A DNA stretch of 38,826 nt from Ascoidea asiatica JCM 7603. Its lineage: Eukaryota > Fungi > Ascomycota. Below, piece by piece: positions 3,195 through 25,588 of the stretch. The position numbers and the translations under genes were made by a program. The notes beneath the pieces were generated by a model. That model saw nothing but the letters and a program-made list of their open reading frames with translations. It ran no database searches and was not told the origin of the DNA. The stretch spans positions 299,695-338,520 of the forward strand of contig BCKQ01000015.1 in NCBI GenBank assembly GCA_001600695.1, given 5' to 3'. Positions within the stretch are counted from its first letter, which is position 1. The number at the start of each line of letters is the position of its first letter.

Positions 3195-3728
3195 ATGCCA
3201 CCAAAAGATGATCAATTATCAAAACTAGAAGAATCAATTTCAGAAATCTCCAACAGACTTTCAGAACTAGAAGCCAGACTAGATTTCAAGCTAGATTTCA
3301 AGCTAGATTTCAAGCTTGATGACAAACTAGCTGATTTTGATTCCAAAGTGGCCACCAGACTAGAATCCCTCAATGCTGCCCATGCTTCCACTGCTTCCAA
3401 CGATGCCAAAGATGCCAATGATCCCGATAATAATGCACAAACCTCTTCAAGCCGGATCATCCGCTTTTTTTCCACCACACGTGTCTATCCCGGAACTGGA
3501 ATATTTATTTACAGTTTTGCTGTTTTCGGCGGTGTAATTCTCGGGTACGTCTTCTTCCGGGGAAGGGGTCTCTCGGCGCTGGAGGAGGTCCAGCAAGACC
3601 CATTGCCGGATCCAGTCTTAGTCTCAGTCTCAGATCCAACTTCAGATGCAAATTCAGATTCTGATTATGCTTTTTATTTACAGTTCTTTTCACTTTTGTT
3701 TATGCTATATTTTATATATTCAGCATAA
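3195..3728 (+). CDS. Hypothetical 177-aa protein with an N-terminal coiled coil and two hydrophobic (TM-like) segments
   Basis: ATG in an AAAATG context. Heptad-like Leu periodicity (LEESISEISNRLSELEARLDFK…). Hydrophobic stretches GIFIYSFAVFGGVILGYVFF and YAFYLQFFSLLFMLYFIYSA. No family recognised. Confidence 0.6.
   Translation: MPPKDDQLSKLEESISEISNRLSELEARLDFKLDFKLDFKLDDKLADFDSKVATRLESLNAAHASTASNDAKDANDPDNNAQTSSSRIIRFFSTTRVYPGTGIFIYSFAVFGGVILGYVFFRGRGLSALEEVQQDPLPDPVLVSVSDPTSDANSDSDYAFYLQFFSLLFMLYFIYSA
3279..3314 (+). repeat. 12-bp tandem repeat (CTAGATTTCAAG)x3 encoding LDFK x3
   Basis: Seen directly in the sequence. Confidence 0.95.
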
Positions 3729-3751
3729 CATATTGACAAAGATTAATAAAA

Positions 3752-3805
3752 ACTTCAAAGACTTCAAAGACTTCAAAGACTTCAAAGACTTCAAAGATAT
3801 CAAAG
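3752..3805 (+). repeat. 9-bp tandem repeat (ACTTCAAAG)x5 plus one degenerate copy
   Basis: Seen directly, just 3' of the orphan ORF. Confidence 0.95.
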
Positions 3806-3918: not shown

Positions 3919-4860
3919 ATGTCTAGTGGTCAACAAACTTCAAAATCTGAAGAAACTCAATTATCTTCTAATCTAACTGAGCAATCTTCTCTGTTAATCA
4001 ATGTTGTTTCTTCTTCTGCTTCTTCCTCTCAATCATCAATTAATGAAAAAATTAAGTCAAATCAATTAAATATTATCAATAATAACAATAATATTAATTC
4101 AATGTCAAATTATTATTCCTTTTTCTTAAATTTATTCTCTTTAATATATTCTTTAATATCTTTATTAAAAATTGTTAATTTCACTTTACCTTATCAATTA
4201 TCAAAAGCAGGTCCAAAACAATTCTTAACTAATATATCCTGTGTTTTTACAATATTCAATTATTCTTTAAATATTTTTTTATTTCTTCTAATTAAAACTT
4301 TAAATTTAATTTCAATTTCAAACTCAAATGGAAAAAATATTAATATTAATAATAATAATTATTCTTTAATTAATAAATTTATAAAAATTTCAACTAATTT
4401 AAATAATTTTAAAAATAATTATATTCATTCAATTTGTTTAATTCTTGAATCAATTGTTACTGTAATTTATTGGCCTTTAAGATTATTTTTTATATCTTTA
4501 ATTTTACATGCAAATTCAAATAATGATTTATCTTCAAGATCAAGAATGTTACCAATTTATTATGATTTAGGTGTTCATTTTATACCTTATTTTTCTTTAT
4601 TTTTAGATTATTTATTATTTAAACCAATTTTTAAAATTTCAAAAAATTTATTAATTTTAATCATTTCTTCTTTAACTCTTTTATATTATTTTTATCTATT
4701 AATTTTAATTGATATTAAAAATGGTCAAGTTTATCCTTATCCTTTTATAAATTTACCAATTTTTCAAAGATTATTAGTATTCATAATTGTTGGTTTTATT
4801 GCTTATTTATCTTTTAATTTTCATCAATTTTTATATAAAAAATTTCATTCTATTCAATAA
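3919..4860 (+). CDS. FAR-17a/AIG1-like integral membrane protein (YHR140W/UPF0641-like), putative Thr/His lipid hydrolase
   Basis: Motifs GPKQFLTNIS (conserved Thr), LESIVTVIYWPLRL, DLGVHFIP (conserved His) and YPYPF, plus several TM segments. Confidence 0.85.
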   Translation: MSSGQQTSKSEETQLSSNLTEQSSLLINVVSSSASSSQSSINEKIKSNQLNIINNNNNINSMSNYYSFFLNLFSLIYSLISLLKIVNFTLPYQLSKAGPKQFLTNISCVFTIFNYSLNIFLFLLIKTLNLISISNSNGKNININNNNYSLINKFIKISTNLNNFKNNYIHSICLILESIVTVIYWPLRLFFISLILHANSNNDLSSRSRMLPIYYDLGVHFIPYFSLFLDYLLFKPIFKISKNLLILIISSLTLLYYFYLLILIDIKNGQVYPYPFINLPIFQRLLVFIIVGFIAYLSFNFHQFLYKKFHSIQ

Positions 4861-5064: not shown

Positions 5065-6540
5065 CTAAAATATAGATTCATTTGAAATATTTTCTTTAAA
5101 TTTACTAATTATTTCATCAATTATTTCATTATCCTTTTTATCTTCTTTATCAAATAGATTTTTAATAAATCCAAATGTGAAAAAGAAACAAAGTTTATTT
5201 GAAATTAAATTTATTACAATTGAACTACCAATTTCAGAAATATTTTGATTAAAAAATAATTCTTCAATTTTATAATTTTCATTTTCATTTTTATTTTCAT
5301 CTTTATTTTCATTTCTATTACTAAAATCAAAATTATAATAACCTAAATTTGAAAATCTAATTAATGGTCTTTTTTCATTATTTAAAATTTTTGATTTTAA
5401 TAGATTCTCATAAATTGGAATATTACCAAAATTTGAATTTATTAAATTATTTTTATATGATTTGGAGATAATATTTGAATTATTTATTGAATTATTTAAA
5501 TTATCATTTATATTTTTAATAATTTTATTATAATTTGATTGATTATTTATTAAAAAATCTTTTGTATTTAATTCAAAAGGTAATAATGATGGAAATGATC
5601 CATATAAATTAATTTTATTTTCAATAAATCTTCTTAAATTAAATGCAATTAAATAATTAAATTTATCTGAATGATTTTTAATTAAAAAATCTTTTGGTAT
5701 TGAAATTAAAAAATAAAAATATATTAGTGAAGTTATTTTAATTTTTAAAAATTTTGATTTTTTCATTAAATTTAAAGTTTCAACTTCATTAAGTTTTAAT
5801 TTTTTGAAAATTGATTCATAATTATAATTATAATACAATGGGTCATAATTTTCTTTTTTCTCTTTATCAATGATATTGAATTTGTTGAAATTAACTGATT
5901 TTTTCAATAGATTATCTTCTTTAGTTAAAATATTATAAAAAGAATCAATTGGTTTTGGAATTGGAGATAATTTCTTATAATCTTTAATGAAATCAAATAA
6001 TATATAATTTTCATCATCATCATCATTATTATTAGTTAAGCAATTAGTATTCATATTATTAAGTGAATTTAATTCATTGAATAAGTCTTGATGAAAATAA
6101 AAAGCAGATAAACCATCTAATAAATGCTCAAATAAAATAATTAATTCATTTTTATCATTAATTATAATTTTCCAAAATGGTAAAAATTGATTAAATAAAT
6201 CAAATTTAAAATTATCTAAAATATTAAGATCATTAGTTGAAATTTGATTATTATAATCAATAACATTATTAAATTTAATTTTTGAACATGGAGTTAAATT
6301 ATAATTATCATCAGAAATTTTAATTAATCTAAGTATAAGATATGAATTTTTTAATAAAACATTTCTTAAAGCTTTAAATAATAAAATTTTAGGAATTGAT
6401 TTATTATATTTTGCAGAAACAAAAAAATTTGTATATAAATCACTTGTCTTTCTTGCAATAAAAAAATCTTCTATAAAACCAGTTTTTCTTGTAAACTTGT
6501 CTTGTACCAGTAAATTTGGAATCGTTTCTTCAGCCTTCAT
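5065..6540 (-). CDS. Alcohol acetyltransferase / N-acetyltransferase family protein (AATase, Atf1/Sli1-like)
   Basis: N-terminal RKTGFIEDFF…YTNFFVSAKYN, ALRNVLLK, LPFWKI, FEHLLDGLSA (HXXXDG-like, one residue short), FNLRRF and FSNLG. Confidence 0.75.
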   Translation of the reverse strand: MKAEETIPNLLVQDKFTRKTGFIEDFFIARKTSDLYTNFFVSAKYNKSIPKILLFKALRNVLLKNSYLILRLIKISDDNYNLTPCSKIKFNNVIDYNNQISTNDLNILDNFKFDLFNQFLPFWKIIINDKNELIILFEHLLDGLSAFYFHQDLFNELNSLNNMNTNCLTNNNDDDDENYILFDFIKDYKKLSPIPKPIDSFYNILTKEDNLLKKSVNFNKFNIIDKEKKENYDPLYYNYNYESIFKKLKLNEVETLNLMKKSKFLKIKITSLIYFYFLISIPKDFLIKNHSDKFNYLIAFNLRRFIENKINLYGSFPSLLPFELNTKDFLINNQSNYNKIIKNINDNLNNSINNSNIISKSYKNNLINSNFGNIPIYENLLKSKILNNEKRPLIRFSNLGYYNFDFSNRNENKDENKNENENYKIEELFFNQNISEIGSSIVINLISNKLCFFFTFGFIKNLFDKEDKKDNEIIDEIISKFKENISNESIF

Positions 6541-7021: not shown

Positions 7022-7030
7022 AAAAAAAAA
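7022..7030 (-). terminator. Pol III terminator (T9) of tRNA-Val
   Basis: T-run immediately after the discriminator base. Confidence 0.85.
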
Positions 7031-7104
7031 TGATTCGTCCCAGGATCGAACTGGGGACGTTCTGCGTGTTAAGCAGATGCCATAACCAACTAGACCAACG
7101 AACC
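7031..7104 (-). tRNA. tRNA-Val(AAC)
   Basis: The reverse complement GGTTCGTTGGTCTAGTTGGTTATGGCATCTGCTTAACACGCAGAACGTCCCCAGTTCGATCCTGGGACGAATCA folds as a full cloverleaf with anticodon AAC and intact A and B boxes. Confidence 0.97.
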
Positions 7105-7330
7105 ACTTCATTGAAATCTTGGCAATTTTGTGGTTTTGCAATTGTTATCCTAAAAAAGCTTTAATTCACGTGGTTTATAGAGTCCGTTTTAATGGTTCTG
7201 CTTATTTTTTGAATTAGCTTAATAAAGATAAAGAAAGATAATAATCTATAAGTCTATAAAGTGGTGTATGGATTGTATACATTGATTAAAATTAATATGA
7301 TAACATGAAATAAAAATAGAGATAAAATAA

Positions 7331-8245
7331 TTATTTTTTATCATAATGACCAAATTCTACAATACAATTATATCTAACCAATTCTTTATTACCAAGATCT
7401 GAGATTTTTTTCATATTTTCATCATCTAATTTAAAATTAAAAATTTCTAAAGATTCTTTAATTCTTTCTTTTTTAGAAGAAGTTGTAACAGGTAAAATTC
7501 CATTTTGATAAACCCATCTTAATAAAATTTGAGCTCTTGATTTATTATATTTAGTTGATAATTGAATTAATAAAGGTTCTAAGATACCAATATGACCTCT
7601 TGCTAAAGGAGAAAAAGCTTCAACTAAAATATTATTTTTTTTACAAAATGAAATAATATTTGGAGATTGATTTTGTAAATATGGATGATATTCAATTTGA
7701 TTAACCATTGGTTTAATTTTACAAATTTTAAAAATTCTTTCAAGATGTTCAACTGACCAACTACTTACACCAATTGATTTAACTTTACCTTCAAAATATA
7801 ATTTTTCCATTTGTAACCATGCAGTTTCTAAAGTTAAACCATGACACATTTCTGGAGTAACTCTTGAAGAATGAATAAGATATAAATCAATATAATTTGT
7901 ATTTAATTCTTTTAAAGCTTTTGAACAAGATTCATAAGGTCCTGAAGATGTTGCTTTTTTACTACCAAAACTTGCAAAATATTTATCAGTTATAAAAATT
8001 TGTTCTCTTTTTAAATTAGAATTTAAAATTGCATGTTTAACTTCATTTTCAGTTGTATAAATTTCTGCAGTATCAATATGATTAAAACCTAAATTAATTG
8101 CAGTTTTTAAAGATTCAACTAATGGATCAACTAAAGTACCTTGTTCTTCTTCTGATCTAGCCTTTTTTAATTTTTGCCATTTAGTTCCTGAACCATATGC
8201 AATTGCAGGAATTTTAACACCATTTGATAATTCAAAATATTCCAT
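7331..8245 (-). CDS. Aldo-keto reductase, YDL124W / conjugated polyketone reductase-like
   Basis: LSNGVKIPAIAYGSGTKW, HIDTAEIY (catalytic Asp/Tyr), IFITDK (Lys), DLYLIH (His), GKVKSIGVS, PMVNQIEYHPYLQ and AQILLRW. Confidence 0.93.
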   Translation of the reverse strand: MEYFELSNGVKIPAIAYGSGTKWQKLKKARSEEEQGTLVDPLVESLKTAINLGFNHIDTAEIYTTENEVKHAILNSNLKREQIFITDKYFASFGSKKATSSGPYESCSKALKELNTNYIDLYLIHSSRVTPEMCHGLTLETAWLQMEKLYFEGKVKSIGVSSWSVEHLERIFKICKIKPMVNQIEYHPYLQNQSPNIISFCKKNNILVEAFSPLARGHIGILEPLLIQLSTKYNKSRAQILLRWVYQNGILPVTTSSKKERIKESLEIFNFKLDDENMKKISDLGNKELVRYNCIVEFGHYDKK

Positions 8246-8701
8246 TTCGATTAAGTTTATTTGTTTATAAAAGTTGCTATTCTTTCTTTTTTAAATATCG
8301 TAAATACAAAATGAAATATACAAACTCATTATTATAAAGAAAATAATAAAGTTAATATAAAAAACAATCCAAACAATTAATAATTCAAAAGTGATAATTG
8401 GTAGTCTTTATCTAAATTTTGGAGGTTTGAAGAAAATGAACAATTCAATAAAAACTTAAGCAGTTACTGATAACAGATTCGTTGTCTGGGATCCGATCGC
8501 GTGTGGAAGAGTAAAACAGACCAAGCTGTCAGGGCAGAAGATTAAAAATTCAAGGACACATGTTTTAGGGCATTTACTTGAGAACAATACTCGCAATACT
8601 CGGTGAAGGACAAATAACAATTACAGTGTTCAGGATAAGGGGCAGGCTCTAAATGCAGTAAAATAAAAAAAAAAAAAATCTAAACACCAAATAAAATTTG
8701 G

Positions 8702-8710
8702 AAAAAAAAA
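8702..8710 (-). terminator. Pol III terminator (T9) after the tRNA-Thr fragment
   Basis: T-run directly after A73. Confidence 0.8.
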
Positions 8711-8765
8711 TGCCTTCAGCCTGATTCGAACAGACGATCTCCTCATTACTAGTGAGGTGCCTTAC
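8711..8765 (-). pseudogene. 5'-truncated tRNA-Thr(AGT), intact from about G19 to A73, with nt ~1-18 missing
   Basis: The reverse complement reads GTAA GGC A CCTCA CTAGTAA TGAGG AGATC GTCTG TTCGAAT CAGGC TGAAGGC A, then T9. The anticodon arm, T arm and B box are intact. I found no 5' acceptor strand (expected GCCTTCA-like) or A box upstream. Confidence 0.9.
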
Positions 8766-9471
8766 GAAAAACGTTTAGCACCTTTTGATTAAGGTTTTGC
8801 GTTTAGAGTTTCGGGAAAAGCGACGTCGCATTTAGCCGCTGGTGTCACGGCCCGTTACGGAGATTAGCCCCTGGTCTATAGCCGAACCCCGACGGGTTTA
8901 TTGCTGCTTTGCAGCTTAAGATTCTACACTTACATCTGTCAAAATAGACTTTATACTGTATATCTTTTATATATTTTTTGTTGTTATTCCAGAAATTTAG
9001 ATTACTTTAGAATCCCCAGTCGATTCTCCAAAGATTCCACTTCAGTTCAACCTTTTCAGAAAAGAAATGAATTAATTAATTACTTCAAAAATTCTAATGT
9101 AGATCCAAGATTACCTTTCATTAATAAAAGCATTAAAAAAAAAATGAAAAATATTATAAATGAGATTAATCTCAATAAATTTTGAAAGTATTGACCCCTG
9201 AAGTAAATAATTTCAGAAAACTTTCCGAACAAAGTCTTTCTATACTTTTTGAAAGCTCCAGGATACTACTATATTTTTTCTTTATTGTTCCCATAAAAAT
9301 TATTTCACAAAATCATAATTATTAGAAAACAAATATACATAAAACATTGATTCAGTTAATTTGTATTGTAACCTCAATTTTATACACAAAATTTTTTTTT
9401 TTTTTTTTGAATTGTCATATTCTTTTATATTGACAATTTAAAGAGATAAAATACTTTTGCTGAAATTGAAA

Positions 9472-12366
9472 TCATGGTATATCTAAAGATTCTGGGGAAT
9501 GTCTAAGAATATTTGATAAATTCCAATCATCATTCCAGTCAATTAATGGATTTTGATCAAGAGTTAAAGTAAATTGATGTAAGGCATCATAATCCCAAAA
9601 TGGATTGAATTCACCTCCACTAGTATTATTATTATTATTATTATTATTACTATTATTAATAAAATTACTATTCATAATATTCATATTACTATAATCATTA
9701 TCATTATTATTACTATTATTATTATTATTGAAATTATTATTATTATTATTGTTATTATCATTAAGGATGTCATTCATATCATTTATAATATTATTATCAA
9801 GGTTACTTATATTATTTTTCCCAATATTGATGCTATTATCTATACTACTATGATTGATAAAAGATGCATTATCTTGATTACTATTATTACCATTATTAAC
9901 AAGATGTTTCATAGCATTAGCATTACCATTATTATTGCCATTACTGTTATTACTATTAATAGACTTGAAAATATATTCATTATCTAAATTTTGATTATAT
10001 ATCATTAATGAAGAAGGTCTAGAAACATCTGCATCTGGAAATAAAAGTTTATGAATCTCTTGAGATATTTCAATTTCTTCTTGAAAATTATTTCCATGAT
10101 TTATTATTGAATTTATATTACTCATATTTAAATTGACTCCATATGCAATATGTCTTTTTATAACTTTTTCAATTAATTTTTTTATTGATATAATACAATC
10201 TTTAACTGCAGGCCATCTTTTACTCATTATTTCTAATAAACTTACACATTTATCTAATAATGATGTTAAACTTTCAAATTTAATTGTTTTCAAAATCCAA
10301 CTTCTTTCATTCCAAATTATATCTAATAAACATGCAATACATTCAACCATAAAATATACTCCATAAAATAAATAATTCAAATGTCCAGTTGCAGAATGTT
10401 CTAAATATGTATCTGCAATAATTTTAATACAATCAATTGATTCTAATATTTGTTTTTTATTTGGAGTTAAATTTATTGGTGATCTTCTTCTTAATCTTAA
10501 TTTTTCAAAATTTTTACTTATAGTTCTAAATTGTAATTGTCTAAATTTATCAAATTCACTTGCTTTATCACACCATTCTTCTAATTTAATATCCATTTTA
10601 AGATACCATTCATCAAATGTTAAAGGAGAAATACTATGACCTAACCATAAAGTTCCATAAATTTCTGATTCTATAATTCTATATTCATTGAAATGTAAAG
10701 CAGCACCTTTGGTATTAACTCCAGATGAATCAAAACCATTTTTATTGATAAACTTATCACTTAATAAAGAAGGATATTTTGCTGTAATTGAATTTTCAGG
10801 TAAAAAAAATGGTAATTTAATAACGGAGCAAATTGCTCTTTCCATGGAAGATGTTGCTAAAAATAATCTTCTCCTTGTATCCAATTCTAAAGTATTTAAC
10901 ATATCTGACATCATTGGTTCTTTATGAAGTCCTAAATGAACACACATTCTTATAGCAATTCCTAAAAGATACCAAGTATCACATGCAGCTGGATTAGTAA
11001 AAGAATAATGAGCAAAAAGTAATGTTACAACTAATGTTTCAAAACTATCTTGAAAACTTAAAGAAGAAATTTTTTGAGCAGCAGTTGTAAAAAGTGCATT
11101 GGATGAAGCTATTGCTTCTGTTTCATTTTTCCAAAGTAAAGTATTAGCACTTATTGCCATTGCTAAAGATACGCAAATTATATCAAAAGAAGATAGATTT
11201 TCTTTTGAATGAAATACTTTATTAAAGCTATCCATAAGAGTAATTTCAGAAATACAAGGATATTGTGGTAAATGATATTTAATGTAATTATTTATAAGAT
11301 AATTAGCAAAATTTATTGGAATTGTTTTTAATTGAATTGGTTTTGTTAAAGGTAATTGTTGTTTAATATGATTAACTTCAATTAAATTATTATTACTTTT
11401 TGAAAATGGAGAAGGTAATGAATTTGGTCTTAATATAAATATTGAATAAATTAAAGTTCTTTGATCTGAAATCCAACTTGTCTTTTTTAAACCAAAATCT
11501 TTATTAACACATTTTAGTAAAGGTAAAGATAAATCTGAAATTAAATTATCTAGATATGAATCCAAATCAAAAATATTATTAAGAAATGAATTTTTGGAAT
11601 TATTAATTTGTTTTTCATTATTATTAGTAATATTTGATTTATTATCTATGAATGAAAATTGAGAAGATGCTAGAATATTAGAATTTTTGTAATAGTTAGA
11701 ATTATTAATACTAGAGATATTTAGATAGTTGGAATTATTAAGATTATTAGAATTATTGAAATTATTATAATTATTAGAGGTATGTGACTCATTAAAAGTA
11801 TTTAATGAAATTTCAGAGTTTGGAAAGGAATTAGAAATAGAACTAGAACTAGCATTAGAATTAGAATTAGATATAGAATTGAAATTGAAATTAAAATTGA
11901 GATTAGAATTTTTAGTTTCTAATTGTAAAATATTTAATTCATTTTCTAAAGTATTTTTTTTATCTTTTAAATAACTTAATAAAGATCTTGGACTTGGTTT
12001 TTTAGTTTCAGGATTATAACCCCAACATTTACAACCTGCTCTTTGACAAGAAGTACAAGTTGGATAAATTAAATCACATTTTCTTTTATTTTTTTTACAC
12101 CTATAGCATGTTTTAATTGGTCTTAATTTACTTGAACCTGAAAATAATAATTTATTTAAATCAATCTGAAAATCATTAATTTCATCTAAATTTTCATTAG
12201 TTGAGTTATTTATAATATTAGTATCAGTATTTTCATCTTTATTGGAGTTATTTATAATATTATTTTCAACATTTGTATCATCATGTGAATTAATGATATT
12301 ATTGATTGAATCAGTTTTTCTTCTTTTTATAGTGATTTGGGAAGTATAAGGTGACTTAGTAGGCAT
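9472..12366 (-). CDS. Zn(II)2Cys6 transcription factor with a fungal-specific TF domain and Asn-rich tracts
   Basis: Binuclear cluster CYRCKKNKRKCDLIYPTCTSCQRAGCKC followed by a coiled coil. Middle homology region WYLLGIAIRMCVHLGLHKE…RRRLF. Acidic, aromatic C-terminus. Confidence 0.93.
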   Translation of the reverse strand: MPTKSPYTSQITIKRRKTDSINNIINSHDDTNVENNIINNSNKDENTDTNIINNSTNENLDEINDFQIDLNKLLFSGSSKLRPIKTCYRCKKNKRKCDLIYPTCTSCQRAGCKCWGYNPETKKPSPRSLLSYLKDKKNTLENELNILQLETKNSNLNFNFNFNSISNSNSNASSSSISNSFPNSEISLNTFNESHTSNNYNNFNNSNNLNNSNYLNISSINNSNYYKNSNILASSQFSFIDNKSNITNNNEKQINNSKNSFLNNIFDLDSYLDNLISDLSLPLLKCVNKDFGLKKTSWISDQRTLIYSIFILRPNSLPSPFSKSNNNLIEVNHIKQQLPLTKPIQLKTIPINFANYLINNYIKYHLPQYPCISEITLMDSFNKVFHSKENLSSFDIICVSLAMAISANTLLWKNETEAIASSNALFTTAAQKISSLSFQDSFETLVVTLLFAHYSFTNPAACDTWYLLGIAIRMCVHLGLHKEPMMSDMLNTLELDTRRRLFLATSSMERAICSVIKLPFFLPENSITAKYPSLLSDKFINKNGFDSSGVNTKGAALHFNEYRIIESEIYGTLWLGHSISPLTFDEWYLKMDIKLEEWCDKASEFDKFRQLQFRTISKNFEKLRLRRRSPINLTPNKKQILESIDCIKIIADTYLEHSATGHLNYLFYGVYFMVECIACLLDIIWNERSWILKTIKFESLTSLLDKCVSLLEIMSKRWPAVKDCIISIKKLIEKVIKRHIAYGVNLNMSNINSIINHGNNFQEEIEISQEIHKLLFPDADVSRPSSLMIYNQNLDNEYIFKSINSNNSNGNNNGNANAMKHLVNNGNNSNQDNASFINHSSIDNSINIGKNNISNLDNNIINDMNDILNDNNNNNNNNFNNNNNSNNNDNDYSNMNIMNSNFINNSNNNNNNNNTSGGEFNPFWDYDALHQFTLTLDQNPLIDWNDDWNLSNILRHSPESLDIP

Positions 12367-13145
12367 TATAGCCTTAGATGATATTGATTAAGTAATATAA
12401 TAGGTTATTACAATATGGTATAGATTTATTTGAAAAATGAGAGTGATATGTATAATATGAGATATGTGAATAATATAATTAGTGTTTTAGAGAATAACTA
12501 CAAATTAATCAGCTTTTTTTCATTGAATCTTTATTGTTTTCCAATTCTTAAATAACTAATAATGTTTTTTAGAAATTATTTTTTCCAAATTAATGGAATT
12601 GTAATTAAAGAAACAATTATCTTTGAGTATTTAATCGATTGATGTAGTAAAGAGATAGTTGATTGTTAAAAATATTTCAATAAAAATACTTTCTAGAAAA
12701 TAAGTTTGGTTTAATTCTGTGGAAATGCAATTAATTGTTTTTGATTTGATTTCTTTTCTTTTAGCAATTCTTTTAGCAATTCTTTCTAAATGATTTGAAA
12801 ATGGATTTAAGAAATAGCTTTAAAAAATAGGCTTGAATAACGTTAAATTTGTTGGAGTGCTGGAGCACTTATCACGGTATCAAGCGACAAAGCAGCCATT
12901 TCAGGCGGAGATTCTCAGAAACACAGTGGAAAAGCCGAAGGTTTAAAGCTGCATCCAATTACACTTTGACAGAAAGAGAAGTGATTGGTGATTGAGAATA
13001 TGGAAGATGGTCGATGGAAGTGTATATAAGAAGAGCAATATCCTCTTTCAAATGATTCTACTTCTTCTTGTTTGTTTGTAGTTATCGTCAGTTACAGTGG
13101 TTAGTGTAAAATAGAGATATAGTTATAAAAACAGAAGAAGACAAA
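12367..13145. promoter_or_regulatory. Divergent promoter shared by the TF and the C45 gene
   Basis: The genes are head-to-head. A GC-richer patch at ~12850-12960 has CGG/CCG triplets and a GATA site (CTTATC, ~12868). TATATAAG occurs at ~13023. Confidence 0.55.
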
Positions 13146-14234
13146 ATGAATTCAATAAATCCAGAAAGATTTTATGATACAGATGTACCATATGTTTTTG
13201 GTAGAGGTACCAATTATGAAATTGGATTTACTCATGGTAGTGTTGCAAAGGATAGAATTAAGAATATGATTGGAATATATGATGAATTATATCAAGAAAC
13301 TGCAGAAATTGGATGGAAAGAAGCAAATAAAAGAGTTGAAAAATTTATACCATATCTTGAAAAAGTTTGGCCAGAAATTTTAGAAGAAATGAAAGGTATT
13401 TCAGAAGGAAGTGGAATTTCATTAATTGATATAATTACATTAAATTGTCGTAGTGAGATTTGTTTAACAAATTATTCAGATGGATGTACTGCAATGGCAC
13501 AAAAAGATCCTGAAACTGGTGATGTTTTTGTTACTCAAAATTGGGATTGGCTTGAATCAATGCATACAACTACAGTTTTACTTGATATTAAACCAAATAA
13601 TAAACCAAGAATGATAATGTTTGCAGAAGCAGGAATTGTTGGAAAATTTGGGTTTAATAGTGAAGGATTATCACTTGTTCAAAATGCTTTGAAATCAGGT
13701 ATTAATCAAATTGCATTACCAACACATCTTGCAATTAGAAAATGTCTTGAATGTAAAAATGTTGATGAAGCAATTTCACAATTAAAAAAATTTGGTGTTG
13801 CAAGTTGTTCAAATATTACTTTAGGTGATAAAAGTGGAAAATTCTTAACAATGGAAGTCACACCAAGAGGTTTTACTATAATTAATTCAGAGCCTGAAAA
13901 AAATGGATATGATGCAGTTATGCATACAAATCATATTTATGGAACACCAAGATTAGTACCAGATCATCCATCAGATAATTCTTTTAGTAGATTAGCAAGA
14001 TTACAAGAATTAAGTTTAAATGCTCCAGTTAATTATGAAGATATTAGAAGAAGATTATCAGATCTCCAAGGTAAACCATATTCCATCTGTAGATGTAAAA
14101 ATCCTGGAGCTGTTGGAGTTGAAGCAATGGTCACAATAGCTACTCCAATAATAAATATCACCAAAGGAGAAGGTATTATAACTATTGGTTCTCCATGTGA
14201 TGAATCATTAACAAAATATAAATTAATTATGTAA
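13146..14234 (+). CDS. Peptidase C45 / acyl-CoA:6-APA acyltransferase (AAT, IAT-like) Ntn-hydrolase
   Basis: GTNYEIGFTHG, EEMKGISEG, LNCRSEI, the DG|CT autocleavage site (Gly113-Cys114), QNWDW, EAGIVGKFGFNSEGL and HTNH. Confidence 0.93.
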   Translation: MNSINPERFYDTDVPYVFGRGTNYEIGFTHGSVAKDRIKNMIGIYDELYQETAEIGWKEANKRVEKFIPYLEKVWPEILEEMKGISEGSGISLIDIITLNCRSEICLTNYSDGCTAMAQKDPETGDVFVTQNWDWLESMHTTTVLLDIKPNNKPRMIMFAEAGIVGKFGFNSEGLSLVQNALKSGINQIALPTHLAIRKCLECKNVDEAISQLKKFGVASCSNITLGDKSGKFLTMEVTPRGFTIINSEPEKNGYDAVMHTNHIYGTPRLVPDHPSDNSFSRLARLQELSLNAPVNYEDIRRRLSDLQGKPYSICRCKNPGAVGVEAMVTIATPIINITKGEGIITIGSPCDESLTKYKLIM

Positions 14235-15792
14235 GATAAACTATATACAAGAATTAAATAATCTTTTTTATAAACTAAATAAAAACATATTTCGCTACAG
14301 ACCAAAGATTACGTAATATATCATGACACAATGTAAAACACTTATTTACCTTATTGATTATCTAATCAGAGAAAACCACTTTTTTTAAGAGCGCGCCACT
14401 ATTTCCGTATTCAGAAATTTAATCCAAATTTGGACTCGGGGAAAACTGTTGGGTAAAACTTAAAAAGTCGGCGTGGAAGGAGTGGCTCCAAATCTGGAAT
14501 GTTGGCCGAGACCGGGGAGCCCAAAGAAGCTGCTTTACCCCGATCTGAGGCCCGAAACGGCAGGACATCGCTGCTTTGCCGAAGTCCACCGGGATGTGTT
14601 CGGTTAAGGGAATATGAACAAATCCGGCTTTATCGACTTAAAGCACTAAAACAACAACAAAACACCACAAAAACATTGACATAAGATATAAAAGGGTTCG
14701 ATTTGGGCTATTTGTTTGTAATTTATATGGTACTACCAAGGGCAATCATTATATTACTGGTAGGTTCGAGAGAAAGTAAAGATGTTATCCTCCTGGGGAT
14801 GATGTGCTCAATTGATCGGAAAGAAGATGCTCTGATCCACCACCAAGCATGTATTCTTTCCTCTTGTCTATAAACATCAAAACAAAAAAGACAAGAGAAG
14901 AAAACACTAAACTAAAAATGAAAAACTACTACTTTGAAGTGTTCTGATCTCATTTTCACAAGCTTAAAGATATAGAGTTCGCAGCTGTAATTGGTTGGAA
15001 TTGTAGACCATATCCAAGCTATTAGCCAATTTTGACCACCTTGTTAGTTTTTGCTGTAATAATGCTGGAATTTGTTTAAATTCATTTTGATTTCGATTTT
15101 TCTTTGGTTGTAATCCAAAAGCCTTTTTGCAAGTTATGAACTTCCGTACCAATTCATTTCAATTTTAATTCTTTCCACTTATTTTTTTTTGCTTTATTCT
15201 CTTTGTTTCTGTTTTTAATTTATCCAATTATATCTATTCATTCCATGATATTCTTATTATCTCGTTTCTATTTTAGTACTAATCATCTTTTTTTTTCAAA
15301 TAAAATTGTTGGCCAGTTATTTGATTTTAGTTCAATGAATTTACCTATTACTATGATTTTACATTAAAAACACCTCATTTGATTCGAATCCATCAATAAA
15401 TATATATATAAAAAGTATCGGCGCTTAGTCAAAAAAGTTAATATAAAAGGCCATTGATTTCTCTTGTTAATTTTTATATCTCCTTTACTTTTATATTTTT
15501 ATTAATAATCAACTTCAATAAATTAATCAATCAATCAATTAATTAATTAATATTTTTTATGCTTTATTAAATAACTAATATATTATTTATCATTTTATAT
15601 TACTTATTTACTTCAAACTATATTTATTTACCTTCCTTAAATAAAAAAAATTTAATTTATTTCAAGCTGTTTGCAAATTTATTAAAATCAACTCATAATC
15701 AATTTAGTTCGAGAAAGAATTCAAATTCTGGAACGGCTAATTCAAATTCTTTAATATATCATTAAAATCTTTTTATATTAAAAAATTTCACA

Positions 15793-17409
15793 ATGACAAT
15801 TCAAACTTTTGAAACACCAATTGTTAAAGTTAATTCAACAAACTCAGTTTGGTCTGATGATACTTTAAAAACAAAATATATTTATGAAAATTCTGTTGTT
15901 GAAAAACAAAATAATGGAAATTATATTGTATCTCCAACTAAAACTAATTATGAATTTAAAGTTGATTTAAAAAAATCAAAAACTGGTTTATTAATTGTTG
16001 GTATTGGTGGTAATAATGGTACAACTTTAATTTCTTCAATTTTAACAAATAAAAATAATATTTCATTTGAAACAAAAGATGGTATAATTAATCCAAATTA
16101 TTATGGTTCTGTAACTCAATCTTCAACAATTAAATTAGGTATTGATAAGAATGGTAATGATATTTATACTCCATTCAATTCAATTTTACCAATGATTAAT
16201 CCAAATGATTTAATTGTTTCTGGTTGGGATATTAATAGAGAAAATCTAAAAAATTCAATGAATAGATCAAAAGTTTTAGATATTAATTTACAAAAACAAT
16301 TAAATCCATTTTTAGAAAAAATTATTCCAATGCCTTCAATTTATTATCCTGATTTTATTGCTTTAAATCAAAAAGAAAGAGCAAATAATATTATTAATAA
16401 AAATTTAAAAGATGAAATTGATTTAAATAATAAATGGAAAGATTTAAATAACATTAGAAATGATATTAAAGAATTTAAATTGAAAAATAATTTAGATAAA
16501 GTTATTGTTTTATGGAGTGCAAATACTGAAAGATATTCAGAAATTATTAAAGGTGTTAATGATACATCAGAAAATTTAATTAATTCAATCAAAAATAATC
16601 ATAAAGAAATTTCACCTTCAACAATTTTTGCAACAGCATGTATTTTAGATAATATTCCATATATTAATGGATCACCACAAAATACTTTTGTTCCAGGATG
16701 TATTGAATTAGCAGAAGAGAAAAAATCATTTATTGGAGGTGATGATTTTAAATCTGGTCAAACAAAATTAAAATCAGTTTTGGCACAATTTTTAGTTGAT
16801 GCAGGTATTAGACCAATTTCAGTTTCATCATATAATCATTTAGGTAATAATGATGGATATAATTTATCATCACCAATGCAATTTAGATCAAAAGAAATTT
16901 CGAAACAATCAGTTATTGATGATATTATTGAAAGTAATGAAATTTTATATAATGATAAATTAGGTAAAAAAGTTGATCATTGTATTGTAATTAAATATAT
17001 TCCTGCAGTTGGAGATTCAAAAGTTGCAATGGATGAATATTATTCCGAATTAATGTTAGGTGGACATAATAGAATTTCAATTACAAACGTTTGTGAAGAT
17101 TCATTATTAGCAACTCCATTAATTATTGATTTAGTTGTAATTACTGAACTTTTATCAAGAGTTTCTTATAAAAAGTTAAATACTGAAAATCCTAATAATG
17201 AAAGTGAAAAAGATAATGAAAGTGAATATGAAAATTTACATTCAGTTTTATCATTTTTAAGTTATTGGTTAAAAGCTCCATTAACTAGAAAAGGATACAA
17301 GCCAATCAATGGACTTAATAAACAAAGAACAGCAATTGAAAATTTTATCAGATTATTAGTTGGATTACCAATTAATAATGAATTAAGATTTGAAGAAAGA
17401 CTTCAATAG
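15793..17409 (+). CDS. INO1: Inositol-3-phosphate synthase
   Basis: [37 protein letters not shown] and [10 protein letters not shown] are MIPS signature motifs. Confidence 0.99.
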
Positions 17410-18230
17410 ATTATTCAATAGAAGAATTCCTTAATTCAGCTATTTTATCATAATTTCTTACTTCTTTAGAAACCCAAGTGTTCTAATAACTTATTTTCAC
17501 TTCTATTTTATTTTTATTTTCTTACTATTTTTCCAATATATTGATATACTGTATATTAGTATATAATAATACATAAGTAATTTATTTATTCAAATTTCAG
17601 TAGTTAACGTTAAACATAAACAAATTATAATTGTAAGTAATAAGAAGAAGTATTAAAACTTGTTTACTTTTGGCGTTATTGATGAAGAGAATAAGACCCA
17701 CATATATGGTCTCTGGAAATCACAAAAAATTAAAAGCTTCCATAGAACTGGCTCCAATAAAACACATGACATCACATGACCTAGCGCTTTTTTTTATCTA
17801 CGAGGTTTCTATTTTTGGAAGTACCCGGATTTTTAGCAAAACCAGCCGAAACAGGCAACTTTGTCGCGTGACACGTAGGATATAACTGCTCCTGCCCCTT
17901 TTGGATGTTTGTGAGTGCGCTGCTCGTTAATTCCGCATTTTGCTCAACTCCCCAGCAAAGACTGATGCTTATTTTGATTATGCCATTCCCATTCATTATT
18001 TATTCCCATCTTTTATTTATCTTTATTTATCATTAATTTTCATTATTTATCTTTATATTCAATTACAGATATTTATGAGTCAGCTCAGTTTATTATTCTT
18101 TCAGTTTATATTATGGTATTGGTGTTGAAGAACTGCATTAGACACTACTTTTTTTCATCTTTATTTAAGCTTACTCTCAAATACTTCTCAATCGGGATTA
18201 TTCCCACCATTTCCCTTTCTGACTTTGAAA

Positions 18231-21200
18231 ATGGATGGAAATAAATTAGATGATTCTGTAATGGATCCGAATCATAATAATAATAATAACAAATGTAATA
18301 ATGGAGATAGTAATATAATCAATAATAGCAGTCTTCTTGATAATGCTTCAAATCTACTTCCAAGTTTTAATACAAATATTAATAACAACTCAGCTTTAAA
18401 TCAATCTTTATTATCTACACCATCTCAGTCTACTATTTTAGACCCATACACTTTATCAATTTCAACTCAAAATATAGTGGAGAATTCTATTAATGCCATA
18501 AAAAAACTTGAAAAAAAAATTAAATCAGTTTCAAATGAAAATGAAATTGAAAATGAACAACAAAATGAAAATGATATTGAAAATGAAATTAATAATTTAG
18601 AATCTTCCAATAAATTTACTGAAAATATTGATAAAAAAATTATTTTAGATAAAAAAGTTAAAAAAAGAAGAAGAAATCCAATTTCTTGTACTTGTTGTAG
18701 AAAAAAAAAAAGAAGATGTGATAGAAAAAGACCTTCATGTACTTTATGTAAAAAAACTGATTCGAATTGTATTTATGAAAATTCTATTTGGGATTCAGAT
18801 TCTATTATTAATCTTAATATTAATAATAACAATAAAAAGAATATAAATAATAAAAATATTACTTATGATAATTCAAATGGTTTCTCAGTTATTAACTCAA
18901 ATATTAATAAAATTTTACCAAACGAGAATAATTCTTCAAGTAATACCCATAGTAATATCAATAATATAAATACAACCAATCCTAGAAAAGCTATAAATAA
19001 AACCATTTTTTCAAAAAATTCAAATCCAATAAAAACTAAATTTAAGTATTATCAACCTTCAAATGGTTCTTTAACTTTGTCTTTACCAATGAATATTCCT
19101 TCTGAGTCAACAGGAAATGTACCTGATAATATCCCAAATTCTTCAATTGAATCAAATTTCAATTTATATTCAAATTATGCTCCTTTATATTCAAAATCTT
19201 TCAAAATTATTAAAGTTGGTCCTTTTCATTGGTTTACAATAGCTCAAAGGGATTGGTATCTTAAATTATTATTCACAAATATTCATAATCTAAAAAAAGT
19301 TACTAATTTTTATAAATCTAATTTCAATTCTCCAATTAATCCACTTTTGAAAAAAAACTTAATTTTAAATAATATTTCGGATAAAAGTTCAACAAATTTA
19401 AAAATTGCTTCAATTGTCAAAAAAAAAAAATCAAATCTAATTAACTTTAATTTACCTTTAAACCAATCTGCTTCAAATAAACTTTTATCAAAAGATTTAG
19501 AAATTTTAGATTTAATCAATAACTTCTTACCTCCAAAATTCATTATCTTAAAGTATATTGATATTTTTTTCAAGAATGTTTATCCATTTTTACCTTATTT
19601 AGATGAAGAATATTTTAGAAAAAATGTTAATATAATTTTATCTTCAACTTCTTTTCTAACTTCATCTTCTACTACATCTTTACCTGCTTCATCAAAAATA
19701 ACAAATGAAAATAATCTTGAAAATAGTTTTAAAAACTCAAAATGTACTGCCACTTTAACACACAAAAGGGATTCATTTATTTTAGCTCAATTATTAATAG
19801 TTTTAAGATTTGCTTATCTTTCAATATCATCACCTTCTTTGAATCCTGCTTTCAATAATAATAAAAAGTTACATGAATCTTCTGATGATTTTAAAAAGGA
19901 AGCTAGGACCAAGCTTGACAATTCGAAACGACACTACCAATCAAAGGATAGTCTAGTAGTAACTCAAAATCCAAAACTGAGTGGGAAATCGAAAGTATCC
20001 AAACCAAAGCCCAAAGCAAAAGAAAAATCAAAAACTAAACCAAAGGGTAAACCCAAACTTCAAGCAAAAGCACAATCAATTCCTAAATCAACCCTTGAAC
20101 CTCAAATCAACAATACCGAAATTCACTCCACCAAATTGCAAGAAGACTCTGAAATTTTATCTTATTCAATTGATGCAGATGCTATTTCCTTTGCAAAATT
20201 ATTGTTAAGCAATTTTAATTATTTCAAAAAGTCCGGGTTGGAAATTTTTCAAACCTTATTGTATTTGAGACTTTATAAATCTTTTGGTCCTGAAGAATCC
20301 GACGGGTTTGAAGGAAATGATTCATTGATTCTTAATGGTCTTTTATTTAGTACAGCTTTATCAATATCATTAAATCGTAATGTTTCAAATTTTTATAACT
20401 TATTGGATCCAAATTCCAAAAAAAATTTCAAGCAATACTCCAAAAAATATAATCAGATTTTGAAACAAGATAATGGGGACTATGGTTTGAACGTTGGGAA
20501 AACAAAGGAAGCTAAAGTTACAGCGAAAACCAAATTTCCTAATTTAATGGAGCCACCTAATGATAGCAGAGCTAACTGCTTTTATAAAGAGCCTGAGTTT
20601 ATTGTTAAGAAAGATAAATTGATTTGGCTTTGGTCTAAATTATGGATTGGGTTGAAGCATTTGGAATCCTCGCAATGTATTAACTTTGGAGTAAATGGAA
20701 ACTTATTTGATCAATTTGATGATAATGAATTACCAAATTATTCTAATTTTTTGAACAGTTCCAACTTAAAGGATTTGAGTTTGGAAAAAGTTTCAACTGA
20801 GGTATTAGTAGATAGAGGAGAAATAGATTTATACGTAAATGACCTTATCGAGTTGACTACGGGCAAACAATTAAATAAAGAAAGATTGAAATCGAAATTT
20901 AAAAGTTGCCAGAAAATTGGTTTAAATAATGGAGAAGCTCAAATTCAAAACTCTGCACCTTCAAATATTTCTCCCTTTGGTATAAGCCACATTGAATTAT
21001 TCAGCAAAGTCCAGAAAATTGAAGATATATTAAACGAAAAGTTTGATCCTCCGAAGAAATTATTAGAAAACTTCATTAAGCCTAAGCTGCAAGTTAAAAA
21101 TGGTCAATATAGGGCAGATGTAGGCAGATTTGAAAGTTTGTCTAGAATAACGAGTTATCTTGAAACCGCATGTTATTTATTTAACTTGAAATATCAATTG

Positions 21201-22481
21201 TATCTTCATTTTGAGTTATGCTCAGATTCAAACAACAAAAATGGAAAACTTGATTTTAATCACAAATATTTAAAGGAGTGCATACGATCGTTTATTGATA
21301 TTTTTTCTTTAATCAAAGTATGCTGCATTCAAGGATCTAATAAACAATATAGTTGGTATTTAATTCCTCTACTTCATTACGCGTTTGATTCATTGAAAAA
21401 TTTTGGTCTAAGTATTATGATAAAAATTCTTCATTTTCAATATTCTTTAATAATCATAAAAATTGAACTGGAAACAAAATCAGAATTAGATCAACATACT
21501 AATTTGAATAAATTGAACAGAATCAAGGTTATTTTGGACAGCATCTTTAGTAGAATTGTGAAATATTTTGAATTTTATCTTTCAATATTTGGAAATATAG
21601 CTGACAAATATTATGATATTTGGAAAGCAATATTACCTTTAGAATTTTCTATAAGATCACTAAAATTTGAAAATTTTGGAGGTAACTTCAGTTTACATAA
21701 AACTTTAAAAGCCAATGTTAGTAACAAGAGAAATAATTTCCTTGATTTAGAAGAGGAAGATTTGCAGCTTATTTTAGATATGTTCAAGTACTATGATTGT
21801 TATGAATTTCTTAATACTACTAATACATCTGAAATTAAGATGAATAAAATAACAAAGCAAGATCCAGTGGTGGTCACTAAACGACCTTACACGGAAAAAC
21901 CCGTTGTTGCACCTTTAAAGACAGTTAATAGTGGACTATCAGATGATTCGACTTCTTCATCTACATCCCCAGAAAGTTCATATTCTTCTTCTCCTAAGAG
22001 TAGTCGTAATACTGGAGATCGTAGAAATAGCATAACCCAAAGCTCTACTAGCAATTCTTCCATTTCTAAGAACACATTTTCAAATACAATAAATAAGGAT
22101 TCAACAATAGCCCTTAGCTCAATTAACATACCACCCACTCTCAACGGTAATTCCAAGAAGATGTTCAATTCTAATTCTCCCGAAAATGAATTAATTCTTG
22201 GTGTTTCGAATAGCAGTGCTCAGCCCTTAAATAACAATAATAACTCCATGGATATAAATTTTGGCAATCAAAATTTAGAAATATCAGGAAATTTTAGAGA
22301 TGATATAAACAATGGGTCCCTTTCTGAATTTAATGATTTTGATCCATCAAGCTTGTTTACAGATGATATAGGAAATTTTTTCTTCGAAGAATTTGATTCA
22401 AATAATCAACTTGCTCAAATTCTTGAACTTTTCAATAACGACCCTACTAATACTTCTACTAGAAATCCTCCTTTTTTTTGA
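18231..22481 (+). CDS. Large Zn(II)2Cys6 transcription factor, Mrr1-like family
   Basis: KRRRNPISCTCCRKKKRRCDRKRPSCTLCKKTDSNCIYE, GPFHWFTIAQRD, FFKNVYPFLPYLDEEYF, QLLIVLRFAYLS and GPEESDG. The first ATG is at 18231; the ORF track starts at a TTG at 18225. Confidence 0.9.
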   Translation: MDGNKLDDSVMDPNHNNNNNKCNNGDSNIINNSSLLDNASNLLPSFNTNINNNSALNQSLLSTPSQSTILDPYTLSISTQNIVENSINAIKKLEKKIKSVSNENEIENEQQNENDIENEINNLESSNKFTENIDKKIILDKKVKKRRRNPISCTCCRKKKRRCDRKRPSCTLCKKTDSNCIYENSIWDSDSIINLNINNNNKKNINNKNITYDNSNGFSVINSNINKILPNENNSSSNTHSNINNINTTNPRKAINKTIFSKNSNPIKTKFKYYQPSNGSLTLSLPMNIPSESTGNVPDNIPNSSIESNFNLYSNYAPLYSKSFKIIKVGPFHWFTIAQRDWYLKLLFTNIHNLKKVTNFYKSNFNSPINPLLKKNLILNNISDKSSTNLKIASIVKKKKSNLINFNLPLNQSASNKLLSKDLEILDLINNFLPPKFIILKYIDIFFKNVYPFLPYLDEEYFRKNVNIILSSTSFLTSSSTTSLPASSKITNENNLENSFKNSKCTATLTHKRDSFILAQLLIVLRFAYLSISSPSLNPAFNNNKKLHESSDDFKKEARTKLDNSKRHYQSKDSLVVTQNPKLSGKSKVSKPKPKAKEKSKTKPKGKPKLQAKAQSIPKSTLEPQINNTEIHSTKLQEDSEILSYSIDADAISFAKLLLSNFNYFKKSGLEIFQTLLYLRLYKSFGPEESDGFEGNDSLILNGLLFSTALSISLNRNVSNFYNLLDPNSKKNFKQYSKKYNQILKQDNGDYGLNVGKTKEAKVTAKTKFPNLMEPPNDSRANCFYKEPEFIVKKDKLIWLWSKLWIGLKHLESSQCINFGVNGNLFDQFDDNELPNYSNFLNSSNLKDLSLEKVSTEVLVDRGEIDLYVNDLIELTTGKQLNKERLKSKFKSCQKIGLNNGEAQIQNSAPSNISPFGISHIELFSKVQKIEDILNEKFDPPKKLLENFIKPKLQVKNGQYRADVGRFESLSRITSYLETACYLFNLKYQLYLHFELCSDSNNKNGKLDFNHKYLKECIRSFIDIFSLIKVCCIQGSNKQYSWYLIPLLHYAFDSLKNFGLSIMIKILHFQYSLIIIKIELETKSELDQHTNLNKLNRIKVILDSIFSRIVKYFEFYLSIFGNIADKYYDIWKAILPLEFSIRSLKFENFGGNFSLHKTLKANVSNKRNNFLDLEEEDLQLILDMFKYYDCYEFLNTTNTSEIKMNKITKQDPVVVTKRPYTEKPVVAPLKTVNSGLSDDSTSSSTSPESSYSSSPKSSRNTGDRRNSITQSSTSNSSISKNTFSNTINKDSTIALSSINIPPTLNGNSKKMFNSNSPENELILGVSNSSAQPLNNNNNSMDINFGNQNLEISGNFRDDINNGSLSEFNDFDPSSLFTDDIGNFFFEEFDSNNQLAQILELFNNDPTNTSTRNPPFF

Positions 22482-25530: not shown

Positions 25531-25588
<58 letters not shown>

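What the first reader, a model, noticed from the sequence alone, without database searches (positions are those of the whole stretch)
8702..8920. tRNA-Thr(AGT) cut in the D-loop, with its 5' end replaced by a hairpin-rich GC-rich segment
Seen: the 55 nt from about G19 to A73 and the T9 terminator are intact, but the 5' acceptor strand, 5' D-stem and A box are gone, and I found no intact copy elsewhere in the window. The replacing ~150 bp (8766-8920) is far more GC-rich than the surroundings. It contains several dyads: ACCTT-N6-AAGGT (8780-8795), GCGACGTCGC (8820-8829), CCGT-T-ACGG (8852-8860), AACCC-N4-GGGTT (8885-8898) and GCTGC-N3-GCAGC (8903-8915). Known: Ty3-type elements insert upstream of tRNA genes rather than inside them. 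Insertion inside tRNA genes is typical of bacterial tyrosine-recombinase islands and eukaryotic Dada transposons. Inference: an undecayed 3' half implies a recent event or selection. Candidate explanations are a tRNA-targeting mobile element end, a split or long-intron tRNA, or a chimeric Pol III ncRNA using the retained B box.
Basis: partly seen in the sequence, partly recalled or inferred. Interest (0 to 1): 0.8.

Follow-up and report, generated by a model that had tools for sequence, protein, structure and literature searches.

The report
Decapitated tRNA-Thr gene beside promoter DNA
A threonine tRNA gene in this AT-rich yeast has lost its first 18 bases and now abuts an ordinary GC-rich intergenic patch; it is most likely a young dead gene copy, not a mobile element, a split tRNA or a known RNA gene.

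Summary
On the minus strand, 8765-8711 is the last 55 nt of tRNA-Thr(AGT). It is identical to ten intact copies elsewhere in the 20.3-Mb genome and is followed by a T9 run. Likeness to the intact genes stops at 8765/8766, in the D-loop.

Most of the exotic readings fail:
- The GC-rich segment, and the whole AKR-TF spacer, are single copy.
- There is no orphan 5' half in the genome or window, and no alternative acceptor strand nearby.
- Rfam gives no hit on either strand. The 5S likeness and the '14-kb inverted end' are at chance level.
- The dyads fold no better than shuffles (z -0.6 to -1.05).
- Contigs of two public runs contain the junction at single-copy depth.

GC-rich patches of this kind are common between genes here, about one per 12 kb sampled. 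None of them is a recognised RNA gene, and they share short motifs with this one.

Best reading (0.6): a young 5'-truncated tRNA pseudogene next to ordinary regulatory DNA upstream of the aldo-keto reductase gene. A chimeric Pol III unit, or a TFIIIC-bound B-box site, is not excluded (about 0.2). No RNA data and no close relative were available. The scan had noted this same stretch before (5S-like note); that reading did not hold.

The parts
8702..8710 (-). T9 run, the Pol III terminator of the former tRNA-Thr gene
   Evidence: Read directly. Intact copies have comparable T-runs.
8711..8765 (-). 3' 55 nt of tRNA-Thr(AGT): end of the D-loop, D-stem 3' strand, anticodon arm (anticodon AGT at 8750-8748), variable loop, T arm, acceptor 3' strand and A73
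   Evidence: 55/55 identical to the intact genomic copies. Partial Rfam tRNA match of 23.9 bits. Loose ends of intact-copy contigs begin at 8765.
8723..8731 (-). B-box core (GTTCGAATC) kept inside the remnant
   Evidence: Read directly. That it still binds TFIIIC is inferred, not shown.
8755..8783 (.). Imperfect palindrome across the junction (12-nt arms, 9/12 complementary, T5/A5 centre). In RNA it would be a 7+3 bp hairpin.
   Evidence: MFE fold. A 12-mer this close to the arm's complement occurs at 1.4e-4 per position in the window, so roughly 1e-3 after allowing for spacers, judged post hoc.
8766..8925 (.). Single-copy GC-rich intergenic patch (46-58% GC) with five short dyads, lying 520-680 bp upstream of the AKR start codon
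   Evidence: No Rfam family. Shares the GCTGCTTTG and CCGAAAC words with other GC patches.
7331..8245 (-). Aldo-keto reductase gene whose upstream region holds the remnant and the patch
   Evidence: Pfam PF00248, E 3.6e-46. 66% identical to an Ascoidea rubescens AKR over its full length.
9472..12366 (-). Zn2Cys6 transcription factor gene ending about 550 bp from the patch
   Evidence: Pfam PF04082 and PF00172.

Best explanation
A tRNA-Thr(AGT) gene once lay between the Zn2Cys6 factor gene and the aldo-keto reductase gene. A local deletion or imprecise break repair removed its first 18 nt and the DNA upstream of it. The remaining 55 nt and the T9 terminator now abut a GC-rich patch that belongs to the ordinary regulatory DNA of this spacer. 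Without its acceptor 5' strand, D-stem 5' strand and A box, the remnant cannot give a tRNA. It is a young pseudogene, tolerated because ten intact copies remain. Shown here: the truncation, its exact position, single-copy status, absence of a 5' half, absence of repeats, and the commonness of such GC patches. Inferred: deletion as the mechanism, youth as the reason for 55/55 identity (gene conversion from the intact copies is the alternative), the regulatory nature of the patch, and continued TFIIIC binding to the intact B box.
For: - Eleven 3' parts but only ten 5' halves exist in the genome, and no orphan 5' half at up to 2 mismatches.
- Only the tRNA part of the spacer 8246-9471 has other copies.
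- There is no paralogous flank at the intact loci.
- The junction k-mers are present at single-copy depth (44 and 41) with no differences in contigs of two runs from two studies.
- No Rfam family matches, even when only 236 nt are searched at E up to 10.
- Fold z-scores are -0.6 to -1.05.
- The segment is unrelated to the tRNA in direct or inverted sense.
- GC>=0.5 patches outside real genes occur at about 7-8 per 99 kb sampled, with no tRNA or Rfam hit in the 60 kb of random sample.
- These patches carry similar CGG/CCG-rich words.
- GCTGCTTTR occurs 5 times in the window against 0.29 expected, four of them in GC patches.
- The AKR of Ascoidea rubescens also has a 61%-GC patch 450-900 bp upstream, without any tRNA.
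Against: - Perfect identity of 55 nt in a genome under strong AT pressure could reflect selection rather than youth.
- The junction is a better palindrome than chance (about 1e-3, post hoc), which a plain deletion does not explain.
- B box, T9, an A-box-like 9/11 match (8878-8868) and TATA-like runs upstream make a plausible Pol III layout.
- No RNA data and no close relative were available, so neither silence nor lack of conservation is shown.
Confidence: 0.6

Rival explanations
1. Exapted tRNA relic. The intact B box recruits TFIIIC. One version: with an A-box-like site in the GC-rich segment it drives Pol III transcription of a 150-210 nt chimeric RNA, ending at the T5 (8771-8767) or the T9. 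The other version: TFIIIC binds without transcription and acts as a boundary between the factor gene and the AKR promoter.
For: - The B box and T9 are intact, and all 55 nt are identical to the working genes.
- There is an A-box-like 9/11 match about 140 nt upstream of the B box, with TATA-like runs at 8947-8968.
- There is a junction hairpin.
- Precedent: ZOD1 and iYGR033c are tRNA-derived loci weakly transcribed by Pol III, and ETC sites bind TFIIIC alone in S. cerevisiae (PMC5356446).
Against: - An A-box match of this quality is expected about 0.4 times in 160 nt by my own estimate, and TATA-like runs are everywhere in 22%-GC DNA.
- The fold is no more stable than shuffles.
- No family, no second copy and no detectable relative.
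- No RNA run holds the stretch.
- GC richness is not diagnostic here.
Confidence: 0.2
2. End of a tRNA-targeting mobile element or recombinase island (Dada-like, tyrosine-recombinase, hAT or LTR), or one end of a 14-kb bracketed segment.
For: - The break lies inside a tRNA gene.
- There is a palindrome at the junction.
- An 11-mer plus T5 recurs inverted at 22696-22722.
- Earlier notes report transposons and tRNA-armed rearrangements elsewhere in this genome.
Against: - The segment and the whole spacer are unique in 20.3 Mb.
- The 22.7-kb match scores 26 against 25, 24 and 23 for unrelated places in the window, and the word has only four genomic copies with unlike contexts.
- No 5' tRNA half lies at any far end.
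- The enclosed ORFs that matched Pfam are ordinary genes (transcription factors, C45 hydrolase, INO1), with no transposase or integrase.
Confidence: 0.04
3. Split, permuted or long-intron tRNA whose 5' part lies elsewhere and is joined at the RNA level.
For: The 3' part is perfect, and the break is in the D-loop, a known ectopic intron site in some archaea and red algae (my own knowledge).
Against: - The 18-nt 5' half occurs only in the ten intact genes and is absent from the window at up to 3 mismatches.
- No sequence able to pair as acceptor plus D-stem 5' strand lies within 5 kb of the remnant, or on its strand anywhere upstream in the window.
- Ten intact genes already supply this tRNA.
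Confidence: 0.01
4. Assembly artefact joining a tRNA-Thr copy to unrelated DNA.
For: The 55-nt core is an 11-copy repeat longer than the k-mer of the contigs, so no single contig spans both unique flanks.
Against: - Contigs of X1 (2023) and X2 (2016) start 30 nt inside the remnant and run 845 nt into the GC-rich side with no differences, at single-copy depth.
- Bookkeeping fits: 11 downstream flanks, 10 5' halves and this junction.
- Both runs may derive from the same strain, so they are not fully independent.
Confidence: 0.02

Closest known systems
tRNA-derived relic loci of S. cerevisiae (ZOD1, from tRNA-Ile; iYGR033c, from tRNA-Arg) and ETC (extra-TFIIIC) sites
   Same: A non-functional descendant of a tRNA gene that keeps a B box in an intergenic region next to Pol II genes (PMC5356446).
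   Different: Those loci are old, degenerate and shown by ChIP to be occupied. This one is undecayed (55/55), lacks the A box outright, and has no occupancy or expression data.
Ordinary tRNA pseudogenes and truncated tDNAs
   Same: Loss of the acceptor 5' strand and A box, failure of the ARAGORN and Rfam thresholds, and many intact paralogues.
   Different: Nothing essential. The palindromic junction is the only unusual detail.
Dicistronic tRNA-5S rRNA genes of Yarrowia lipolytica (my own knowledge)
   Same: A tRNA sequence directly fused to another GC-rich Pol III-type sequence in a yeast.
   Different: In Yarrowia the order is an intact tRNA followed by 5S. Here the unknown segment comes first and the tRNA is a 3' fragment. 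The segment also fails the 5S model and a direct alignment to this genome's own 5S (p about 0.07).
SNR6 (U6) of S. cerevisiae with its downstream B box (my own knowledge)
   Same: A B box downstream of a short T-terminated unit would fit if the T5 at 8771-8767 were the terminator.
   Different: U6 of this genome is elsewhere (89 bits). The segment matches no snRNA model.
tRNA-targeting elements (Ty3, Dada, bacterial integrase islands)
   Same: Association with a tRNA gene.
   Different: No repeat family, no TIR or LTR, no TSD, no element-borne gene.

Membership tests
Functional tRNA gene | Complete cloverleaf with acceptor 5' strand and D-stem 5' strand (A box) | tested here: not met
   The 18 nt present in the ten intact copies are absent. 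ARAGORN makes no call. Rfam gives 23.9 bits against a 29-bit cut-off, model positions 10-63 only.
Functional tRNA gene | B box and oligo-T terminator | tested here: met
   GTTCGAATC at 8731-8723 and T9 at 8710-8702.
Split / intron-in-D-loop / permuted tRNA | A 5' part elsewhere that can pair with the retained acceptor and D-stem 3' strands | tested here: not met
   Genome: only the ten intact genes carry it. Window: none at up to 3 mismatches. The degenerate pairing pattern has no hit near the locus.
tRNA-targeting mobile element end | Further copies of the element end in the genome | tested here: not met
   One match (itself) for 8766-8925 and for the whole spacer apart from the tRNA part.
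tRNA-targeting mobile element end | Terminal inverted or direct repeats with the other tRNA part at the far end | tested here: not met
   The candidate at 22686-22722 is at chance level. No 5' half is there.
tRNA-targeting mobile element end | Transposase, integrase or reverse transcriptase gene inside | tested here: not met
   ORFs at 9472-22481 that matched Pfam are transcription factors, a C45 hydrolase and INO1. Two other ORFs of the window outside this span (3919-4860 and 25396-27012) had no Pfam match.
5S rRNA or 5S-derived gene | Match to the 5S covariance model or to the genome's own 5S | tested here: not met
   No RF00001 hit at E up to 10 in 236 nt. Global alignment to the own 5S (L013) is reached by 137 of 2000 shuffles.
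Known structured RNA family (Rfam 15) | Covariance-model match on either strand | tested here: not met
tRNA-relic Pol III locus / ETC site | B-box consensus in non-tRNA context | tested here: met
tRNA-relic Pol III locus / ETC site | TFIIIC (with or without TFIIIB and Pol III) occupancy, or a Pol III transcript | not testable with these tools
   No RNA or ChIP run for this organism was offered.
tRNA-relic Pol III locus / ETC site | Conservation among related species | tested here: inconclusive
   The nearest named relative is too far away (AKR 66% with unlike neighbours, TF 46%). The runs of organisms B and C align only at the tRNA-Val.

The most novel reading that the evidence does not exclude
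The decapitated tRNA-Thr gene has been put to new use. One possibility is that its B box and T9 terminator, with an A-box-like site in the unique GC-rich segment, form a Pol III unit for a lineage-specific 150-210 nt RNA. The other is that the B box alone holds TFIIIC as a boundary between the Zn2Cys6 factor gene and the AKR promoter. Selection for that role would then explain the perfect 55 nt and the junction hairpin.
Probability: 0.15. Interest if true: 0.5.

Novelty: new member of a known kind. Interest (0 to 1): 0.2.

Why it matters
As it stands, little: it is one more truncated tRNA pseudogene, in a yeast that still has ten good copies. It is useful as a caution for this genome. GC-rich, dyad-bearing patches are ordinary between its genes and should not by themselves be read as RNA genes or element ends. 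If the remnant proved to be bound by TFIIIC or transcribed, it would be a very young example of how tRNA relics such as ZOD1 or ETC sites arise, caught before decay.

Tried and rejected
The alignment is not significant and there is no 5S model hit.
- U6/U6atac-like words on the plus strand: my own impression. The real U6 is elsewhere and no model hits.
- 14-kb bracket (s1-614843): chance level. The generic inverted-repeat scan was swamped by AT-rich low complexity.
- Inverted or direct derivation of the segment from the tRNA itself: none.
- Coding exon: stops in all six frames. Only junk ORFs nearby.
- Paralogous flanks at the ten intact loci, to rebuild the ancestral state: none.
- Orthologous spacer: the TF relatives are at most 47% identical and carry no tRNA. 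The A. rubescens AKR locus is not syntenic, and only AT-rich noise aligns.
- Foreign origin: no likeness in plasmids or phages. Two exact-word scans of metagenome contigs were blank. No high-depth (mitochondrial or rDNA) contig lies on the segment.
- Rfam on the INO1-upstream GC patch: nothing credible.
- H/ACA, C/D, Sm-site, SRP and RNase P/MRP motifs were looked for by eye only. None was convincing.

Full report
**1. What is there**

On the minus strand, 8765-8711 reads as the end of the D-loop, the D-stem 3' strand, the anticodon arm with AGT, the variable loop, the T arm and the acceptor 3' strand of a threonine tRNA. A T9 run follows at 8710-8702.

A pattern search of the window's own assembly (20.3 Mb, 71 contigs) found this 51-nt core eleven times. 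In ten places it is preceded by the same 18-nt 5' part: the acceptor 5' strand, U8/G9, the D-stem 5' strand and the start of the D-loop. Here it is preceded by unrelated sequence.

Identity to the intact genes starts at the G at 8765. In the laid contigs, records that come from the intact copies run off as loose ends exactly at 8765, and their loose letters are the reverse complement of the missing 5' part.

ARAGORN finds only the tRNA-Val at 7030-7105. The Rfam tRNA model gives a sub-threshold partial match of 23.9 bits against a cut-off of 29, over model positions 10-63. The truncation, its position and the intact terminator are therefore confirmed.

**2. The neighbouring segment**

- GC content in 100-bp windows rises to 0.57-0.58 over about 8750-8950, against 0.15-0.30 around it.
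- They do not make the segment unusually foldable. Minimum free energies are within about one standard deviation of dinucleotide shuffles: z = -1.05 for the 215-nt unit, -0.61 for the minus-strand segment and -0.86 for the plus strand.

**3. Is the junction real?**

No RNA run and only three DNA runs of 'organism A' hold the stretch.

Logan contigs of X1 (2023) and X2 (2016, a different study) each contain a record covering 8736-9610 with no differences, at depths of 44 and 41. These are the single-copy depths of the neighbourhood.

This is what a k=31 graph must give when the tRNA core is an 11-copy repeat. It shows that the tRNA/GC-rich junction exists in the reads. It does not by itself tie both unique flanks together.

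The bookkeeping does fit: eleven distinct downstream flanks, ten 5' halves and this junction. The two runs may come from one strain.

**4. Tests of the exotic readings**

*(a) Mobile element.*
- 8766-8925 matches only itself in the genome.
- In the whole spacer 8246-9471, only the tRNA part has other copies.
A local alignment of the 65 nt next to the junction against every 120-nt tile of the window scores 26 there, and 25, 24 and 23 at unrelated places.
- The word has four genomic copies with unlike contexts.
- The ORFs between that matched Pfam are Zn2Cys6 factors, a C45 acyltransferase-type hydrolase and INO1.

*(b) Split or long-intron tRNA.*
- The 18-nt 5' half occurs only in the ten intact genes at up to 2 mismatches, and nowhere in the window at up to 3 mismatches.
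- A degenerate pattern for any strand able to pair with the retained acceptor and D-stem strands has no hit near the locus.

*(c) Known RNA.*
- Rfam gives nothing at gathering thresholds, nor at E up to 10 on 1.1 kb apart from the partial tRNA, nor at E up to 10 on 236 nt.
- The genome's 5S and U6 are elsewhere.
- The 5S-like ends noted earlier do not survive a global alignment to the genome's own 5S: 137 of 2000 shuffles score as well.

*(d) Derivation from the tRNA itself,* direct or inverted: none.

*(e) Foreign or organellar DNA.*
- No plasmid, phage or metagenome likeness.
- No high-depth contig lies on the segment.

*(f) Coding.* There are stops in every frame.

**5. How special is a GC-rich patch here?**

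The same window has further intergenic patches at 12837-12965, 14414-14660 (0.63 GC) and 17796-17978.

I drew six arbitrary 10-kb stretches from other contigs. They contain four more patches with at least 50% GC, with no tRNA and no Rfam family in the 60 kb. That makes roughly one such patch per 12 kb sampled.

These patches look alike: many CGG/CCG triplets and recurring words of the CGGAAA type. The patch studied here shares two words with them:
- GCTGCTTTR occurs five times in the window against 0.29 expected, four of them in GC patches. The 10-mer occurs 14 times in the genome against 0 for the reversed control.
- CCGAAAC occurs six times against 0.9 expected.

The closest named relative of the neighbouring reductase is Ascoidea rubescens, at 66% identity. 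Its gene also has a 61%-GC patch 450-900 bp upstream, without any tRNA and without alignable sequence.

I read these patches as ordinary regulatory DNA. That is an inference, but it removes the main reason for thinking the segment exotic. The patch lies 520-680 bp upstream of the reductase start codon.

**6. What remains unexplained**

- The 55 nt are perfect although the surrounding DNA is about 22% GC. Either the event is young, or the copies are homogenised by gene conversion (known for dispersed yeast tRNA genes; my own knowledge), or the remnant is under selection.
- The junction is an imperfect palindrome with 12-nt arms, 9/12 complementary, around a T5. A 12-mer that close to the arm's complement occurs at 1.4e-4 per position in the window, so about 1e-3 with some freedom of spacing, judged after the fact. 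It may be a trace of how the break was repaired, or chance.
- The B box and T9 are intact. An A-box-like 9/11 match lies about 140 nt upstream, with TATA-like runs further up. By my estimate such an A-box match is expected about 0.4 times in 160 nt, so this is weak.

**7. Verdict**

The most likely reading (0.6) is a young 5'-truncated tRNA-Thr pseudogene. It was produced by a local deletion or imprecise repair, lies next to ordinary GC-rich upstream DNA of the reductase gene, and is tolerated because ten intact copies exist.

A re-used relic is the main rival (0.2). It could be Pol III-transcribed like ZOD1 or iYGR033c, or TFIIIC-bound like ETC sites (PMC5356446). This could not be tested for want of RNA, ChIP or close relatives.

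Mobile-element end (0.04), split tRNA (0.01) and misassembly (0.02) are essentially rejected.

**Host organism**

It is a budding yeast. The evidence is Zn2Cys6 factors and an alcohol acetyltransferase and the best AKR hit in Ascoidea.

Noticed in passing
window 8903-8911, 12888-12896(-), 14529-14537, 14570-14578; genome loci L019-L032: The word GCTGCTTTR (often GCTGCTTTGCC) recurs in GC-rich intergenic patches. It occurs 5 times in the window against 0.29 expected, and the 10-mer occurs 14 times in the genome against 0 for the reversed control. It may be a transcription-factor site.
   Followed up: partly
window 12837-12965, 14414-14660, 17796-17978; L036:40-188; L040:3450-3717 and 5300-5468; L041:1748-2021: GC-rich (50-69%) patches of 150-270 bp are common between genes in this 22-26% GC genome. 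They carry CGG/CCG triplets and CGGAAA-type words, and none matches a tRNA or an Rfam family.
   Followed up: partly
L012 (G000:C3:150731-150781): One of the ten intact tRNA-Thr(AGT) genes has A instead of G in the acceptor 3' strand. This turns the U6-G67 wobble pair of the other copies into a U-A pair.
   Followed up: no
window 9472-14234 and L033:4623-7689: The divergent pair of Zn2Cys6 factor and C45 (AAT-family) hydrolase is also found in an unnamed yeast assembly whose factor is 47% identical. This fits a conserved regulator-enzyme pair.
   Followed up: partly
window 3751-3789 (-): Four tandem 9-bp units (GTCTTTGAA...) lie just past the end of the GC-elevated ORF 3195-3728.
   Followed up: no
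window 25396-27012 (+): An ORF of 538 aa, the same length as INO1 at 15793-17409, has no Pfam match at all.
   Followed up: no
L013 (G000:C26:142938-143058): Only one 5S rRNA place was reported in the assembly. It lies in C-rich flanking DNA, possibly a collapsed rDNA unit.
   Followed up: no
window 8400-8650: A second, milder GC rise (0.34-0.42) lies between the tRNA remnant and the AKR start codon. It is probably the core promoter.
   Followed up: no
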